Source of the DNA: Paramicrosporidium saccamoebae KSL3
Lineage: Eukaryota; Fungi; Cryptomycota
Direction: 5' to 3'
Length of the DNA stretch: 32,000 bases
NCBI GenBank assembly: GCA_002794465.1
Contig: MTSL01000101.1
Location: forward strand, 40,793-72,792
Shown one piece after another: positions 13,762 to 32,000 of this stretch. The position numbers were made by a program, and so were the translations under genes. Below the pieces are notes generated by a model, which saw only the letters and a program-made list of their open reading frames with translations, did not search any database and was not told the DNA's origin. Within the stretch, counting starts at the first letter, position 1. Each line of letters begins with the position of its first letter.

Positions 13762-16193
13762 ATGTATAAAGCTCTGTTCGGGTAGAAATTTGGTGAGAGA
13801 TGCTGAAAATCTCTAGCCTGAAATCACAGAAAGGAAGATTGTTTTCCAGTGGTTCAGACAAGGTAGAGATAGTCGCAACACTTTGACAAATAGCCCCTTT
13901 TTGATAAGATTCTCGTGGCAAATCGCGGCGAGATTGCTTGCCGTGTTTTTCGGACAACTAGGCAGCTTGGAATCCGGTCGGTGGCAGTCTTCAGTGAAGC
14001 TGATAAGGAATCATTACACACTTCAATGGTCGACTCTTTACGCGATTAAACTAATTTATATAGGCCGATGAGGCAGTTTGCATAGGACCGGCGCCCAGCC
14101 AAGACAGCTATTTGGCGATCCAAAAAGTCATAAGAGCTGCAAAGAAGACGGGCTCGCAAGTAAAACCCCATGGATCTACTTCCACCATATTAGGCAGTTC
14201 ATCCAGGTTATGGGTTTTTGTCAGAGAATTCCCAGTTTGCGTCTGAGCTCGAAAAAGCTGGAATAACATTCATTGGCCCACCAATCCAGGCCTTAAGAGA
14301 CATGGGATCTAAAAGGTCCATCCAGACAAAGAGTTGACCTGTAGTGCGTCAAAAGAAATCATGACTGCGGCTGGAGTACCGGTTGTTCCCGGGTATCACG
14401 GAGAAGGACAAGAAGCAGAATTTTTGAAGAAACAAGCGGATCAGATCGGGTAGATGTCAGATGGGCTTATGCATAATCTTGACAGATATCCTCTGATGAT
14501 AAAAGCTGTTTTGGGAGGAGGCGGTAAAGGTATGCGAATTGTACAACAACGTGAAGAGTTTGACGAAATGCTCGAGTCGTCGCGTCGGGAGGCGCGAAAG
14601 TCTTTCAATGACGATCGTGTTCTCCTAGAACGATATATCGAACGTCCTCGCCACATTGAGGTACAGGTGTTCGGCGATCAATTTGGAAACGCAGTGTATT
14701 TATTTGAACGAGACTGTTCGGTCCAACGGAGACACCAAAAAGTCTTGGAAGAGGCCCCAGCTGTATATTACTCGATTTTCAGACGCTCAGATTGTAGCCG
14801 GGACTTTCAGAAGGTCAACGACACGAGCTTGGAGAGATGGCCGTAGCCGCAGCAAAAGCTGTCAAATATGTTGGAGCTGGCACTGTGGAATTTATATTTG
14901 ACTGCGACACGGGCAAGTTTTATTTCATGGAGATGAACACGCGACTGCAAGTAGAGCATCCTGTCACAGAGATGATTACTGGTTTGGATTTGGTTCATTG
15001 GCAGATTCACGTACCCGATTCTCAGCCATTTTAATATTATGCCAGGTTGCGTCGGGAAATAGACTTCCTTTAACCCAGAATCATATAAACCGCACCGGAC
15101 ATGCAATTGAAGCCCGAATCTACGCCGAAAATCCTGAAAAGTACTAGTCGACGCTGTCTAACGGACGTAGTAATTTCATGCCGGATACGGGGAGACTCAA
15201 GTTTTTAAGAATGCCAAACAACAATGCAAACGTACGTATAGAGACGGGAGTACGTGAAGATGATGAGATCAGCGTATACTATGATCCAATGATAGCCAAG
15301 GTCGTAGTTCATGGGGAGACACGCCTAGAGTCGCTTCGTCGGTTGGATCAAACTCTTGGCGAATTCCATGTTGCAGGAGTCCGAACAAACATTTCTTTAA
15401 TTAGGAAAATTCTTGCCGAAGACCAATTCAAGTCTGGCTTAGTGGACACGAGTTTTATTAAGCAGCATCATGATCGACTCTTCGCCAAGACATCTCCTAA
15501 CACAAACCATCTGGCACTCTCAGCAGTGCTGCATGTTATCTCAAATCAGACGGGCAACAACATGCACGATCCTTGGCTCCAGAATGATGGATATTCTGGA
15601 TTTATCGAGCGCACGACTTTGCTCAAAATTAAGGCTTACAATAACGTTTACTCATGCAACGTAAGTGTTGAGAGCAAATCAGAATTCATGGTGAGAGTGG
15701 TAAGACTAGTTTTTTGCGTATCATTTAGTAGACCGATCAGAGCGGAGCACAGGAAACATTTTCTGTTTGTGCCAATGTCAGCGACGGAAAGGTTGAAGCA
15801 ACGGTCAATGATTTGCGTTTGCCGCAACTTTACTTTTACAAAGATAGCTGCGTGACGCACATCTTCTTCCCGGTAGACTATCCCCTTAGCCAGTCTTACT
15901 TTTAGGAGGGGCCGCAACTGTTTGAATTTGTAAGCGAAGGATCAGAGGGTTTAAATAAGGGGCCTTCAGAAAATTCAGTACTCAGTCCAATGCCATGTAG
16001 AGTGAGCCAGGTCCCCATCAAAGTCGGAGATCGGGTCAAGAAGGGTGGCGTTCTAATGATAGTTGAGGCTATGAAGATGGAGCATATTATCAAGGCTCCT
16101 ATGGATGTAAAGATTGCAAAGATAAACTATTCCGAAGGCCAGCTTGTTGGTGAAAAGAAGCAGCTAATCGAATTCTCCGATTCATGTGAATAA
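13762..16193 (+). CDS. MCCC1: 3-methylcrotonoyl-CoA carboxylase alpha (biotin carboxylase + BCCP), about 688 aa, 11 introns
   Basis: Introns 13782-13816, 13863-13893, 14029-14063, 14160-14193, 14316-14344, 14450-14485, 14763-14797, 15011-15045, 15141-15170, 15700-15731, 15873-15905 give one open frame. [50 protein letters not shown] and EAMKMEH biotin site. [17 protein letters not shown] favours MCC over PCC. Confidence 0.88.
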
Positions 16194-21429: not shown

Positions 21430-22391
<962 letters not shown>

Positions 22392-28520: not shown

Positions 28521-31497
28521 CTACTTTTTAAGAGTGCGTTGCTTTTCAGCAAACTGTACAACTCGTCGTTCTATAAAAAGCCCCTTTCTCTCTCGTATCT
28601 TGATTAAATGGCGCATGGCCAAATTGTCCAGTCCGTCGCCATGGGAGCCATAATCTTCCAGTTCCTCTTCAGTCACAGGTATCCAATACGGATCTTCAGG
28701 GAGCGTTTCGAATCCAGCAAACATTAACTGAGGAATCGCAACTCCAGCCGTTCTTCCTCGGAGATCGTCGGCGAAACCAAAACTCTCTGCTACGGGAAGG
28801 AGTGAATTTACGGTGAAAAACCCAGTTCCTTCATGGTATTCTTCATCTAGCACTCGGCCGTGTCTCCGTCCCAAGGCAGAATAGACTTTGCCGAGCATTT
28901 CAGCAGTTGTTTGAATTGCGCAACGATAGACTGCAAGCATCATCCGAGGGGACCAAAACAAAAAGGAGGCTTCAAACAGCGTTCGACTCAGAGAGATTAG
29001 CTGAGCCGCCAATTGAGTTCGAGCCCTGCATCTCTCCTCTTCGTCATCTGGAAGATCAATCAACTCAAAAGTCTCGACCAAAAAAGCCACCCCCATCATG
29101 GGCTCATGTGCTAGAGGCCCCTTTTCTGTAATGACTTGAAATCCTGTCAAGATGCTCGACTGAAATGGCTTGAGATCAGTACCAGGGACAAAAAACGTCC
29201 CTGGATCGGTACTGCAGAAACGTGTACTACACATTAGCATATTGGGGCCCTCCCTTCTAGGTCCAAAGGCCCAAATATTTTTTGGCGAAAAATCTATATA
29301 TAAGACAGCTGAAGATGGTCTTACCAGGCCAAGGAGCAGGACAAGAGTCAAGAATTGCTCTAATTTCATCCTCAATTTTGTGCAATTCTTCGAGTTCAAG
29401 ACGAGCAATTTCTTTGAGGATTTGACGATGCTGGACGATATAGTCTAAAAGCGATTCCGGGATTGGCATGGCTCTGGCACCAATTCGACAATTCCCTTCA
29501 ATTGTAGTCAAAGTGATCATACCATCATCCTCTCTTACTGAATCACTGAACCCAACATGAACCTTCCACAAGTCTTCATTACGACTCTTCTCACAAGAAA
29601 TAGTTTCTCTGTAAGGAACCATCGGAGACGACACGATTATGTCAACACCAGTTTTCGTGTATTTTTCAGAAAGATCTTTCAGGCACTGTTCCAAGTGCAG
29701 CTCGCCAGCAGTGGCCAAGATATGTTCACCATTTTCTTCTTGTAAAAATGTTTCTGCGCATGGATCTGCTTGGCAGAGCAATTCAAGACCCGCAACCACT
29801 TCGGCAAGATTTTCAAGTTGAGCAGGACGAACCGCGACTTGCACAATTGGAGCAATCTCACCTCGAGGCGTCTCCAATAGGGGACAATCGGGATCCGAGG
29901 AAAGGGTAGCAGACTTTTTAATATATTGACCAATTCCGCCGATTCCAAAAATGGTCCCGGTGTGAACTTGGTCAACTGGCTCCAGGTCGCGGCCCATCAG
30001 GAGAAATAGCTCGGATATCACAATTTCTGTGACCTGGCGATTCTTTCCAGGCAAGTGTTTAGGCTCAAGAATGTAAATCTTTTGCCCAACTGAAAGCGTT
30101 CCGTGGAAAATCCGAGCCATCCCAACAAGCTTTTCAGTAGATTCTTCGGAAGATGCATCGAGATTAAACATGGCTTCAGCGAGATCTTCAACTGATGGAT
30201 TACGAGACGGCATTCCCGAGGATCGCCCTTTCTGCATGGTTACTGAGAAAAACTTTGAAACGAATGCAACCATAGGTGCTTCTTCAGGATGTTCTGGAGA
30301 CGCCAACTTGTCAATGATAGCGCGGGAAGCGGTGGGGAGCTGATCATTGTTTTTGATGATTGAGGAGAGTCGGATTCGATTGGATTCCAGGGGAGATGGG
30401 ATGTGCTTGATAATCACGTTAAAGACAGTCTCTGCCAGGGGAAGCCATTGGCCCAGAACTGACCGCAAGACTGCTTTGCCATCCTTTGCCTTTAACTCTC
30501 TCGCTGATAATTTGGCACGGGTCTGCGACGAAATCTTTTCAATCTTTGATTCATTCCAGTTCAAAACTGATGCATCGTAAACTGCCCAAATAGCATCAAG
30601 AACAAACTGAGCAAACATGGTCTTTGTCAATCCTTGAGGCTCTGCAGCCTTCTTGGGGAGCACCTTTTTCGTCTTGGCATCAAAGTAGAATTCTCCCCAC
30701 AGGGTCTGTCGAAGGGCAGATGCTTTCATGTCAAGTTTCTGAGAGTATATCTGGACAAATTGTTCAATTGTACAAGCCCATCCATCTGTGCTGCTGGCAA
30801 AAATGACATTTCCAACGAGTGGATCGAATACATTTGTATTGGCTGTGCCCAACGCATCGTCCAAGGCCTCCTCAGTCTCTTCTTCATCCTCTTTTAATGT
30901 GGCTTGCGCAGCATTAACCTGTTCCAACAGTCTGAACAGCCAATTTGCAGCGTCAGCCGTCGACATTTTCAACTCAGTGACTAGCCGATCGATCTTGTTG
31001 ATCACTAGACACGGCGTTAACCGCTCCCTCTTGGCCTGCCGAAGGACAGCCATAGTCTGGGTGCAAATCCCTTCGACAGCATCTACCAGTACTAGACAGC
31101 CATCTACAAGTCTCGCGGCTGTAACAACTTGGCGTGAAAAATCCACATGGCCGGGCGAGTCTATGAGGTTGATAGCATGTCTCTGTACATTATCCGGCGA
31201 AATTGGGGCATCGTACAGCAGTGTAATAGCGCTCGCCTGCATCGTAATTCCCCTCTGTTGTTCATCTTCACGACTATCCATATACCTCAGACTGCCTGCC
31301 TGTTTAAAGGAAATAATCCCGTTGGATGCTAACAACGTATCTGTCAGCGTGGTTTTCCCGTGATCGACATGCGCCAGGATACACACATTCCTTATCCGTT
31401 TCGGGTGCGCCAAAACGGGCTCTATCAGCGCCCTGTTGACGCGGAGACTTCCCATAACGGGAGTTCCGGAGGGACTGGAGACGCGACTAAAGCTCAT
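28521..31497 (-). CDS. EFL1: Elongation factor-like GTPase Efl1/Ria1 (60S maturation), about 970-980 aa
   Basis: IRNVCILAHVDHGKTTL, RGITM, NLIDSPGHVDF, INKIDRL. A 31-nt intron 29324-29294 joins the two ORFs. IWAFGP, GFQVITEKGPLAHEPM, LPVAESFGF and C-terminal KQRTLKK distinguish it from eEF2. Start is ATG 31497 or 31455. Confidence 0.95.
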
Positions 31498-31515
31498 TTA
31501 GCGGGCTCCCTGGTC

Positions 31516-31881
31516 ATGGTGCCAGTGAAAGAAACAAACGAACTTTCCAAAGCGGAAATCGAATATTTGTTGCAGCAGAGCGCGCATAATTCCCTTTTTA
31601 AGTGTAATGTCAGATGTCCAGTGGATAGTGATCATATTATCGACATTTCTCATCTAGCATCCCACGTGAGCAATTGCCGCCGAGTATAAGCTGACCTGCT
31701 GTTTTGTTCATCAGTTTAGAGAAATGCCCATTTGGGCCACAGAAAGTGTCCAAATAATGAATTTCACTACACAACACCAGACAAGCTGAAGGAACATGTC
31801 CAAACATGTCCAGATGAAGCAGTGACAACTAAATCCGATGACAAGACCATTGCAATCGTATCTTATTCGATGAACAGCTAA
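31516..31881 (+). CDS. Small protein with two tandem CHHC (U11-48K-type) zinc fingers, GTSF1/Asterix-like
   Basis: Exon 31516-31683, 36-nt intron 31684-31719 (GTATAA, CTGAC branch-like, TTTAG), exon 31720-31881. Fingers CPVDSDH-IIDISHLAS-H-VSN-C and CPNNEFH-YTTPDKLKE-H-VQT-C, both C-x5-H-x9-H-x3-C. The 3' end may extend via further introns. Confidence 0.75.
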
Positions 31882-32000
31882 AGTGTAGATTAACATGGTA
31901 GAGTTAAAGCTTCAGTGCGGTCTTTTTGTGTCACAGGAAGACATGGAAGTGTACAATAGTCGGGTTTAAAAAAGAGGATAACAGATCTGGTGTAAGGATT

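What the first reader, a model, noticed from the sequence alone, without database searches (positions are those of the whole stretch)
31516..32000. Hidden GTSF1/Asterix-like tandem CHHC zinc-finger gene in a fungal-lineage genome: hint of a PIWI- or RdRP-type small-RNA system
Seen: the ORF track shows only one finger before a stop. Removing a 36-nt intron of the size typical of this window gives MVPVKE...RCPVDSDHIIDISHLASHVSNCRRRNAHLGHRKCPNNEFHYTTPDKLKEHVQTCPD..., two exact C-x5-H-x9-H-x3-C motifs separated by an 11-residue linker starting CRRRN (GTSF1: CRKNH). Known: this finger occurs singly in Trm13 and U11-48K/SNRNP48, but as a tandem pair in small GTSF1/Asterix proteins. These activate PIWI slicing in animals, support the RRF-3 RdRP complex in C. 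elegans and act in the ciliate scnRNA pathway. Fungi are generally described as lacking PIWI-clade Argonautes. Inference: an early-diverging fungal relative may keep an ancestral GTSF-dependent silencing module, or has repurposed the protein. Candidate extra introns (31858-31888, 31949-31984) could extend it to an acidic/aromatic ...EDMEIWCKD at the window edge, reminiscent of the GTSF1 DEDWDKD region.
Basis: partly seen in the sequence, partly recalled or inferred. Interest (0 to 1): 0.85.

Follow-up and report, generated by a model that had tools for sequence, protein, structure and literature searches.

The report
Unannotated GTSF1-like zinc-finger gene, Paramicrosporidium
A small gene missed by the published annotation of the amoeba parasite Paramicrosporidium saccamoebae encodes a protein whose two zinc fingers match those of GTSF1, a helper of small-RNA silencing enzymes that reviews describe as absent from fungi; what it works with in this organism is unknown.

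Summary
The core observation holds. The window is contig MTSL01000101.1 of Paramicrosporidium saccamoebae (Rozellomycota). No gene is annotated between the EFL1-like GTPase and a mitochondrial-carrier gene. A complete three-exon gene lies there (31516-31683, 31720-31857, 31889-31969). It encodes 128 aa with two exact C-x5-H-x9-H-x3-C fingers.

Six relatives from environmental assemblies share the synteny and, in most cases, both intron positions. The gene ends inside the window, which rules out a Trm13 or SNRNP48 body.

The best sequence, profile and fold matches are GTSF1:
- PDB profile search: E = 8e-9 for GTSF1, against 6e-3 for U11-48K.
- Foldseek: 2.0 Å to silk-moth GTSF1 bound to SIWI.
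- Each finger matches its own GTSF1 counterpart.

It differs from animal GTSF1 in four ways. It has a conserved N-terminal helix. Its C-terminus (ELKLQCGLP motif) is predicted helical. It has no Trp-rich PIWI-binding tail. Only two of the four RNA-binding basic residues are kept.

I could not test whether this genome has a PIWI, Argonaute or RdRP partner, so a small-RNA role is inferred only. I rate it a new variant of a known kind, of moderate interest.

The parts
31516..31683 (+). Exon 1 (aa 1-56): start codon, conserved N-terminal helix (LSKAEIEYLLQQSAHNSLF) and the first CHHC finger, ending ...NCRR.
   Evidence: The start is supported by relatives that begin MP... at the same place. The helix at residues 12-24 is an AF2 prediction.
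31615..31677 (+). First CHHC zinc finger, CPVDSDHIIDISHLASHVSNC (ligands C34, H40, H50, C54).
   Evidence: These four residues are invariant in 8 of 8 family members. It prefers the GTSF ZnF1 model over the ZnF2 model.
31684..31719 (+). Intron 1, 36 nt, phase 0, GTATAA...TTTAG, with a CTGAC branch-like motif.
   Evidence: The same position holds an intron of 47-49 nt in L004, L005, L006, L007 and L009. It is absent in L003.
31720..31857 (+). Exon 2 (aa 57-102): linker RNAHLGHRK, the second CHHC finger and a variable spacer.
31747..31809 (+). Second CHHC zinc finger, CPNNEFHYTTPDKLKEHVQTC (C66, H72, H82, C86), followed by PD.
   Evidence: It prefers the GTSF ZnF2 model by 30 bits.
31858..31888 (+). 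Intron 2, 31 nt, GTATCT...GTGTAG.
   Evidence: Removing it gives ...KTIAI|INMVELKLQCGLFVSQED, which matches P0004, P0052 and the spliced relatives. The same position holds an intron of 43-74 nt in L004, L005, L006 and L009.
31889..31969 (+). Exon 3 (aa 103-128 plus TAA): the family-specific C-terminal motif INMVELKLQCGLFVSQEDMEVYNSRV.
   Evidence: AF2 predicts helices at 94-111 and 118-127 with pLDDT above 90.
28521..31497 (-). Neighbouring EFL1-like GTPase gene, transcribed divergently. Its annotated ATG (31497) is 18 nt from the ATG of the zinc-finger gene.
   Evidence: The same divergent neighbour is present in L004-L007.

Best explanation
Positions 31516-31969 (+) hold a real, complete protein-coding gene under selection, missing from the public annotation. 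It has three exons and introns of 36 and 31 nt. It encodes a 128-aa protein made of an N-terminal helix, two CHHC zinc fingers that should each hold one zinc ion (C34/H40/H50/C54 and C66/H72/H82/C86), a short variable spacer and a conserved C-terminal motif (ELKLQCGLP...Y) predicted to be helical.

The two-finger module shares ancestry, finger for finger, with that of GTSF1/Asterix. The protein belongs to a Paramicrosporidium-clade family that is a divergent relative of GTSF1 in the fungal lineage.

By analogy, and only by inference, the fingers dock on a large RNA-silencing enzyme, on structured RNA, or on both, and the protein acts as a small cofactor. Relatives of this organism are reported to carry AGO-clade Argonaute, Dicer and RdRP but no PIWI. 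The tail lacks the Trp residues that bind PIWI. An RdRP partner (as in nematodes) or an AGO-clade partner is therefore more likely than PIWI.

My estimates: real gene about 0.95; two-finger module homologous to that of GTSF1 about 0.8; role in small-RNA silencing about 0.35.
For: Gene reality:
- Two adjacent exact CHHC motifs, against 0.033 expected per shuffled window.
- Seven full-length family members with 40-48% identity to the window protein.
- Conserved synteny, GTPase(-) / this gene(+) / Mito_carr(-).
- Both intron positions conserved while the intron sequences and lengths differ.
- pN of 0.21-0.46 against pS of 0.74-1.0 in all 21 pairs.
- A validated 29-nt intron nearby that the annotation also missed.

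GTSF1 relationship:
- Exhaustive phmmer over 1.84 billion representatives gave 48 hits. Six are family members. All 42 others carry tandem CHHC fingers.
- Every named hit among the 20 looked up is an arthropod protein, three of them named GTSF1 or GTSF1 homolog.
- The family profile against PDB gives E = 8e-9 for GTSF1 entries 9nhb_E and 6x46_A across both fingers, against 6e-3 for U11-48K on one finger.
- In 14 of 14 comparisons, finger 1 prefers the GTSF ZnF1 model and finger 2 the ZnF2 model.
- The AF2 model (pLDDT 94.6) has as best Foldseek hits silk-moth GTSF1 in the SIWI complex (E = 1.7e-4, rmsd 2.0 Å over 65 columns) and mouse GTSF1.
- Pfam finds only PF05253, in 8 of 8 members.

Partner reasoning: Rozella has AGO and Dicer, and many microsporidia keep AGO, Dicer and RdRP. 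C. elegans GTSF-1 binds an RdRP and also lacks the basic RNA-binding residues.
Against: - There is no expression or splicing data, so the junctions rest on homology and frame alone.
- No Argonaute, PIWI or RdRP of P. saccamoebae could be examined, so the functional step is pure analogy.
- The tail differs from GTSF1. It has no Trp, and it is predicted to be folded rather than disordered. That prediction rests on only three sequences covering the C-terminus.
- Mouse RNA-binding residues R26 and K36 correspond to Asp43 and Asn/Asp53 here.
- Two-finger proteins outscore one-finger proteins automatically in whole-protein searches. Part of the E-value gap to U11-48K reflects architecture, not descent.
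- The GTSF finger models were built from hits selected by similarity to this protein.
- The family was found only in a handful of Paramicrosporidium-like assemblies. No Rozella or microsporidian member was seen.
Confidence: 0.5

Rival explanations
1. The protein is a lineage-specific RNA-binding CHHC protein unrelated to small-RNA silencing. It keeps the ancestral two-finger module but uses it, with its own N- and C-terminal helices, for another task such as binding tRNA, rRNA or snRNA, or acting as an RNA chaperone.
For: CHHC fingers in all three known groups bind structured RNA, and mouse GTSF1 binds tRNA. The parts of GTSF1 that contact PIWI have no counterpart here, and the termini are family-specific and predicted to be folded. 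No silencing partner has been shown for this genome.
Against: Every characterised tandem-CHHC small protein (animals, nematodes, ciliates) works with a PIWI or an RdRP. Half of the GTSF1 basic RNA-binding ridge is lost, which argues against RNA binding of the GTSF1 type as the main activity.
Confidence: 0.35
2. It is a reduced orthologue of the minor-spliceosome protein U11-48K (SNRNP48).
For: It belongs to the same Pfam family, PF05253. The first finger aligns with the U11-48K finger at E = 6e-3 to 1e-2.
Against: It has two fingers where U11-48K has one. It is 128 aa against 339 and has no U11-48K C-terminal body. Foldseek gives E >= 0.66 and probability about 0.1 to U11-48K chains in U11 snRNP structures. 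No U11-48K-like protein appears among the 48 significant hits. All introns seen here are GT-AG of 29-74 nt.
Confidence: 0.03
3. It is the N-terminal exon set of a Trm13 tRNA methyltransferase that continues beyond the window or the scaffold gap.
For: Trm13 carries one CHHC finger. The window ends 31 nt after the proposed stop, at a 194-N gap.
Against: The in-frame stop at 31967-31969 is matched by stops at the equivalent place in six relatives on gap-free contigs. There the convergent Mito_carr gene ends 16-41 bp downstream. No CCCH finger or methyltransferase domain was found in any member.
Confidence: 0.01
4. It is a chance ORF or a decaying pseudogene.
For: It is not annotated in the public record, and there is no expression evidence.
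Against: See the conservation, synteny, conserved intron positions and pN much lower than pS.
Confidence: 0.02

Closest known systems
GTSF1 / Asterix (animals; UPF0224/FAM112 family; PDB 6x46, 9nhb-9nhs)
   Same: - Small protein with two tandem CHHC fingers. The spacing is identical and the inter-finger linker is 11 residues, as in silk-moth GTSF1.
- Shared position-specific signatures: CP-x-D in finger 1, then C-R-(R/K)-x-N/H; CP-(Y/F)-N in finger 2, then CPD(R/K).
- Best hits by sequence, profile and fold.
   Different: - It has an added conserved N-terminal helix.
- Its C-terminus is a conserved ELKLQCGLP...Y motif, predicted helical, not a disordered tail.
- It has no counterpart of the PIWI-binding W98/W107/W112.
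- The positions of R26 and K36 hold Asp and Asn/Asp.
- The organism belongs to a lineage reported to lack PIWI.
C. elegans / nematode GTSF-1 (cofactor of the RdRP RRF-3)
   Same: It has tandem CHHC fingers and lacks the basic RNA-binding residues of finger 1. Its partner is an RdRP, an enzyme class present in relatives of this organism.
   Different: There is no evidence of an RdRP with an RRF-3-type GTSF-1-interaction domain in Paramicrosporidium. The sequence is no closer to nematode than to arthropod proteins.
Ciliate Gtsf1 (Paramecium; partner Ptiwi09)
   Same: It is a non-animal protein with the double CHHC domain at the N-terminus. This shows the module is older than animals.
   Different: The ciliate protein has an unstructured C-terminus and a PIWI partner. 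It was not compared directly here.
U11-48K (SNRNP48) and Trm13
   Same: They share the CHHC finger fold and the Pfam family PF05253.
   Different: Each has a single CHHC finger and is much larger, with other domains. Neither is among the significant hits.

Membership tests
GTSF1/Asterix family | Two tandem CHHC (C-x5-H-x9-H-x3-C type) zinc fingers near the N-terminus. | tested here: met
   Exact motifs at aa 34-54 and 66-86. Pfam PF05253 matches two stretches. The ligands of finger 1 are invariant in 8 of 8 members, and finger 2 is intact in all 7 full-length members.
GTSF1/Asterix family | Small protein (under about 20-30 kDa) with no other domain. | tested here: met
   128 aa here and 140-155 aa in relatives. 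PF05253 is the only Pfam family. The stop codon and the convergent neighbour bound the gene.
GTSF1/Asterix family | Sequence and fold closest to GTSF1, with finger 1 matching ZnF1 and finger 2 matching ZnF2. | tested here: met
   PDB profile search gives E = 8e-9 to 9nhb_E and 6x46_A. Finger-specific preference holds in 14 of 14 comparisons. Foldseek top hits are 9nhc_E and 6x46. All 42 non-family hits carry tandem CHHC fingers.
GTSF1/Asterix family | Basic RNA-binding ridge on ZnF1 (mouse R26, R29, K36, K39). | tested here: not met
   The aligned positions are D43, H46, N53 and R56. In the family, the first is D/E/Q, the second H/R/K, the third D/N and the fourth invariant R. The same loss is reported for C. 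elegans GTSF-1.
GTSF1/Asterix family | Disordered central/C-terminal region with conserved aromatic (Trp) residues that bind PIWI. | tested here: not met
   There is no Trp after finger 2 in any member. The conserved ELKLQCGLP...(Y/F) region is predicted helical with pLDDT above 90. That prediction rests on few sequences.
GTSF1/Asterix family | Physical and functional partnership with a PIWI-clade Argonaute or an RdRP. | not testable with these tools
   No tool gave access to the rest of the P. saccamoebae genome or proteome, and no paper reports its RNAi genes. Relatives have AGO, Dicer and RdRP.
U11-48K (SNRNP48) | Single CHHC finger followed by a long C-terminal body that binds U11-59K, in an organism with a minor spliceosome. 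| tested here: not met
   It has two fingers, is 128 aa and has no such body. Foldseek gives E >= 0.66 to U11-48K chains. Whether the organism has a minor spliceosome was not tested.
Trm13 | CCCH finger, one CHHC finger and a TRM13 methyltransferase domain. | tested here: not met
   No PF11722 or PF05206 match in any member. The gene ends at 31969, and relatives end at the same place on gap-free contigs.

The most novel reading that the evidence does not exclude
The Paramicrosporidium clade has kept an ancestral GTSF-type cofactor that works with a non-PIWI silencing enzyme, either an AGO-clade Argonaute or an RdRP. It would use lineage-specific N- and C-terminal helices in place of the Trp-rich tail. 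That would mean the partnership between GTSF and silencing enzymes predates the animal-fungal split and is not tied to PIWI. It would also overturn the statement that fungi lack GTSF1.
Probability: 0.25. Interest if true: 0.8.

Novelty: new variant of a known kind. Interest (0 to 1): 0.55.

Why it matters
[quoted passage not shown] This gene shows that a GTSF-type two-finger protein survives in at least one deep branch of the fungal lineage. It was hidden from annotation by introns of 29-36 nt.

If it serves an Argonaute or RdRP, it would widen the known partners of GTSF cofactors beyond PIWI and nematode RRF-3. It would also push the partnership back to the opisthokont ancestor.

There is a practical point too. 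The P. saccamoebae gene set misses or splits genes that have very short introns; thymidylate synthase is an example in the same window. Gene-loss claims for this genome therefore need rechecking.

Tried and rejected
- The word-indexed homologue search with the 109-aa product found nothing. The exhaustive search was needed.
- Exact look-up of the 746-aa ORF failed because the real gene has an intron.
- I tried to recover the annotated intron structures from gene range and product length. The result was hopelessly ambiguous, with more than 50 solutions per gene. One intron was validated by homology instead.
- JGI metagenome scans found nothing.
- Literature searches for RNAi genes of Paramicrosporidium gave nothing specific.
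- Rfam finds nothing on either strand in 31300-32000.
- Antisense ORFs here are at most 63 aa. I did not search them against any database.
- I ran no further search on an Argonaute query. Hits are not filtered by organism, so the P. saccamoebae protein would not be visible among thousands of closer matches.

Full report
**Where the window comes from.** Three intronless ORF products of the window are exact matches to NCBI proteins on one 147,562-bp contig. The contig is MTSL01000101.1 of assembly GCA_002794465.1. MTSL00000000 is the genome of Paramicrosporidium saccamoebae KSL3, an intranuclear parasite of amoebae placed in Rozellomycota. It was annotated with Maker and with Augustus trained on Rhizopus.

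In the public record no gene is called between the EFL1-like GTPase (window 28521-31497, minus strand) and a mitochondrial-carrier gene beyond the window. The window end at 32000 abuts a 194-N scaffold gap.

**The observation.** The ORF from ATG 31516 runs to a stop just after ...NCRR. Removing 31684-31719 (36 nt, GTATAA...TTTAG, with a CTGAC inside) keeps the frame. The product then has two exact C-x5-H-x9-H-x3-C motifs, at residues 34-54 and 66-86.

- These are the only two matches to that pattern in all six frames of the 32-kb window. Shuffled windows average 0.033.
- Pfam zf-U11-48K passes its gathering score, 26.7 against 21.1 bits, with two matched stretches.

Introns this short are real in this genome. 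The thymidylate synthase gene of the window is annotated as two separate models. Removing a 29-nt GT..AG segment (21822-21850, minus strand) gives a product that aligns without a gap across the junction to solved TS structures, at E = 7.6e-115. The annotation pipeline evidently failed on such introns, which explains why this gene is missing.

**Relatives and the full gene model.** The word-indexed search found nothing. An exhaustive phmmer search of 1.84 billion representative proteins gave 48 hits at E <= 1e-3.

- The best hit, P0004 (155 aa, E = 1.7e-15), is a full-length intronless relative from an ENA metagenome.
- Five short hits (P0005-P0008, P0033) are exon-1 ORF calls. All end in '...DCRRV', which is read-through into the GT of an intron at exactly the position proposed here.
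- A profile search added P0052, an exon 2-3 product.

Fetching the contigs and splicing by hand gave seven full-length members: the window, L003, L004, L005, L006, L007 and L009.

- Intron 1 (phase 0 after CRR) is present in six of the seven, at 36-49 nt.
- Intron 2 is present in five of the seven, at 31-74 nt.
- Intron sequences are unrelated between members, while the exons are conserved.

All members share one layout:
- an N-terminal LSxxEIxxLLxxSxxSSLFR segment;
- finger 1, CP(I/V)DxDH...H..(D/N)C, followed by RRRNAHLG;
- finger 2, CP(Y/F)N..H(Y/F)...H...CPD(R/K);
- 15-25 variable residues;
- A-x-(V/I)-Q-M-V-E-L-K-L-Q-C-G-L-P, then acidic residues, an (L/V/I)-(Y/F) pair and a stop.

The unspliced reading QEDMEVYNSRV* aligns with EDLQLYQSYCSKQ*, EETTLYQQYSSEQ* and EEMETYRLAKQ* in relatives. 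The gene therefore ends at TAA 31967-31969, and the protein has 128 residues.

**Evidence for selection and synteny.** L004 is a 128.9-kb contig from a Logan assembly. It is collinear with the window over the region retrieved, about 11 kb: TS, S24e, ADK, Csm1, the EFL1-like GTPase, this gene, then Mito_carr. The divergent GTPase and the convergent carrier gene also flank the gene in L005, L006 and L007. By eye, the carrier gene also follows in L003. The carrier stop lies 16-41 bp from this gene's stop in the relatives. That leaves no room for a Trm13 or SNRNP48 body.

Between P. saccamoebae and L004, the GTPase is 60% identical and the carrier 58%. The zinc-finger protein is 42% identical. It evolves faster than its neighbours but keeps its motifs. 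The non-synonymous difference (pN 0.21-0.46) is far below the saturated synonymous difference (pS 0.74-1.0) in all 21 pairs.

**What it resembles.**
- All 42 non-family hits of the exhaustive search carry a tandem CHHC pair.
- All eight named hits among the 20 looked up are arthropod proteins. Three of them are labelled GTSF1 or GTSF1 homolog, including Drosophila obscura and Nymphon striatum.
- A profile of the family hits GTSF1 entries 9nhb_E and 6x46_A at E = 8e-9 across both fingers. It hits U11-48K (2vy4) at 6e-3 on one finger.
- I built separate models from the first and second fingers of 32 of the GTSF-like hits. In 14 of 14 comparisons the family's finger 1 scores higher on the ZnF1 model and finger 2 on the ZnF2 model. 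This favours common descent of the whole two-finger module over an independent duplication. One caveat applies: those hits were selected by similarity to this protein.
- An AlphaFold2 model built on a 40-sequence alignment has mean pLDDT 94.6 and pTM 0.71.
- Its only significant Foldseek matches in the PDB are silk-moth GTSF1 in the SIWI-piRNA-target-Maelstrom complex (E = 1.7e-4, rmsd 2.0 Å over 65 columns) and mouse GTSF1. U11-48K chains score E >= 0.66.

**How it differs from GTSF1.**
- Mouse GTSF1 needs R26, R29, K36 and K39 for RNA binding and W98, W107 and W112 for PIWI binding.
- In the alignment the four basic residues correspond to D43, H46, N53 and R56. Across the family the first is acidic or Gln, the third is Asp or Asn, the second is His/Arg/Lys and the fourth is an invariant Arg. 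Only half of the ridge is kept. A review notes the same loss for C. elegans GTSF-1, which serves an RdRP rather than a PIWI.
- No member has a tryptophan after finger 2.
- The tail is a conserved motif predicted as two helices (94-111 and 118-127), together with an N-terminal helix (12-24), all at high confidence. Only three sequences cover the C-terminus in that alignment, so this is a prediction and not a finding.

**Function.** Shown here: a conserved, selected gene with a GTSF-type two-finger module. Inferred: the protein acts as a zinc-dependent adaptor or cofactor.

Every characterised tandem-CHHC small protein works with a PIWI (animals, Paramecium) or an RdRP (nematodes). Papers report Argonaute and Dicer in Rozella allomycis, and Argonaute, Dicer and RdRP in many microsporidia, but no PIWI clade in fungi.

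I found no statement about P. saccamoebae itself and had no tool to search the rest of its genome. If the protein serves silencing, an AGO-clade or RdRP partner is more likely than PIWI. I put the silencing role at about 0.35. The main rival, a lineage-specific RNA-binding role unrelated to small RNAs, I also put at about 0.35. The U11-48K, Trm13 and pseudogene readings are effectively excluded.

[quoted passage not shown] The family found here is restricted, in the data searched, to seven Paramicrosporidium-like sequences. JGI metagenomes gave none.

It passes the architectural and similarity tests for GTSF1 but fails the two tests tied to the known mechanism, the basic ridge and the Trp tail. 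I therefore file it as a new variant of a known kind rather than as a plain member.

Interest is moderate. It is a clean, unreported occurrence that makes a question testable, but the exciting part, a GTSF-dependent silencing module in the fungal lineage, has no direct evidence yet.

Noticed in passing
window 21430-22376 (-), intron at 21822-21850: Thymidylate synthase is annotated in the public record as two separate gene models (104 and 177 aa). Removing a 29-nt GT..AG intron gives one product that aligns without gaps to solved TS structures. The annotation of this genome seems to miss very short introns in general.
   Followed up: yes
window 31497-31516: The annotated start codon of the EFL1-like GTPase (31497, minus strand) and the start of the zinc-finger gene (31516, plus strand) are only 18 nt apart. 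In the L004 orthologue the GTPase alignment begins at residue 28 of the window ORF, so its true start may be Met15 (31455). Either way the two transcripts must share or overlap their 5' regions.
   Followed up: partly
L001 18930-19276 (just beyond window end 32000): A 194-N scaffold gap is followed by two copies of a 62-nt direct repeat, 77 nt apart and 84% identical. Here the stop codons of this gene and the carrier gene are 542 bp apart (gap included), against 16-41 bp in relatives. A repeat insertion probably caused the assembly gap.
   Followed up: partly
window 14469-16193 (L001 1398-3122, +): Two adjacent small gene models carry pieces of a biotin carboxylase (CPSase_L_D2; Biotin_carb_C plus Biotin_lipoyl). 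This may be another gene fragmented by missed short introns, or a decaying gene.
   Followed up: no
L004 (Logan SRR21707646 contig, 128.9 kb): This is a long contig from an unsequenced relative of Paramicrosporidium. Its EFL1 is 60% identical and the gene order is collinear over the region retrieved, about 11 kb. It would be useful for comparative re-annotation of P. saccamoebae.
   Followed up: partly
P0020 (hit): An unnamed 235-aa NCBI protein combines a tandem CHHC pair with what looks, by eye, like a Tudor-type C-terminal segment. This architecture is not part of the finding.
   Followed up: no
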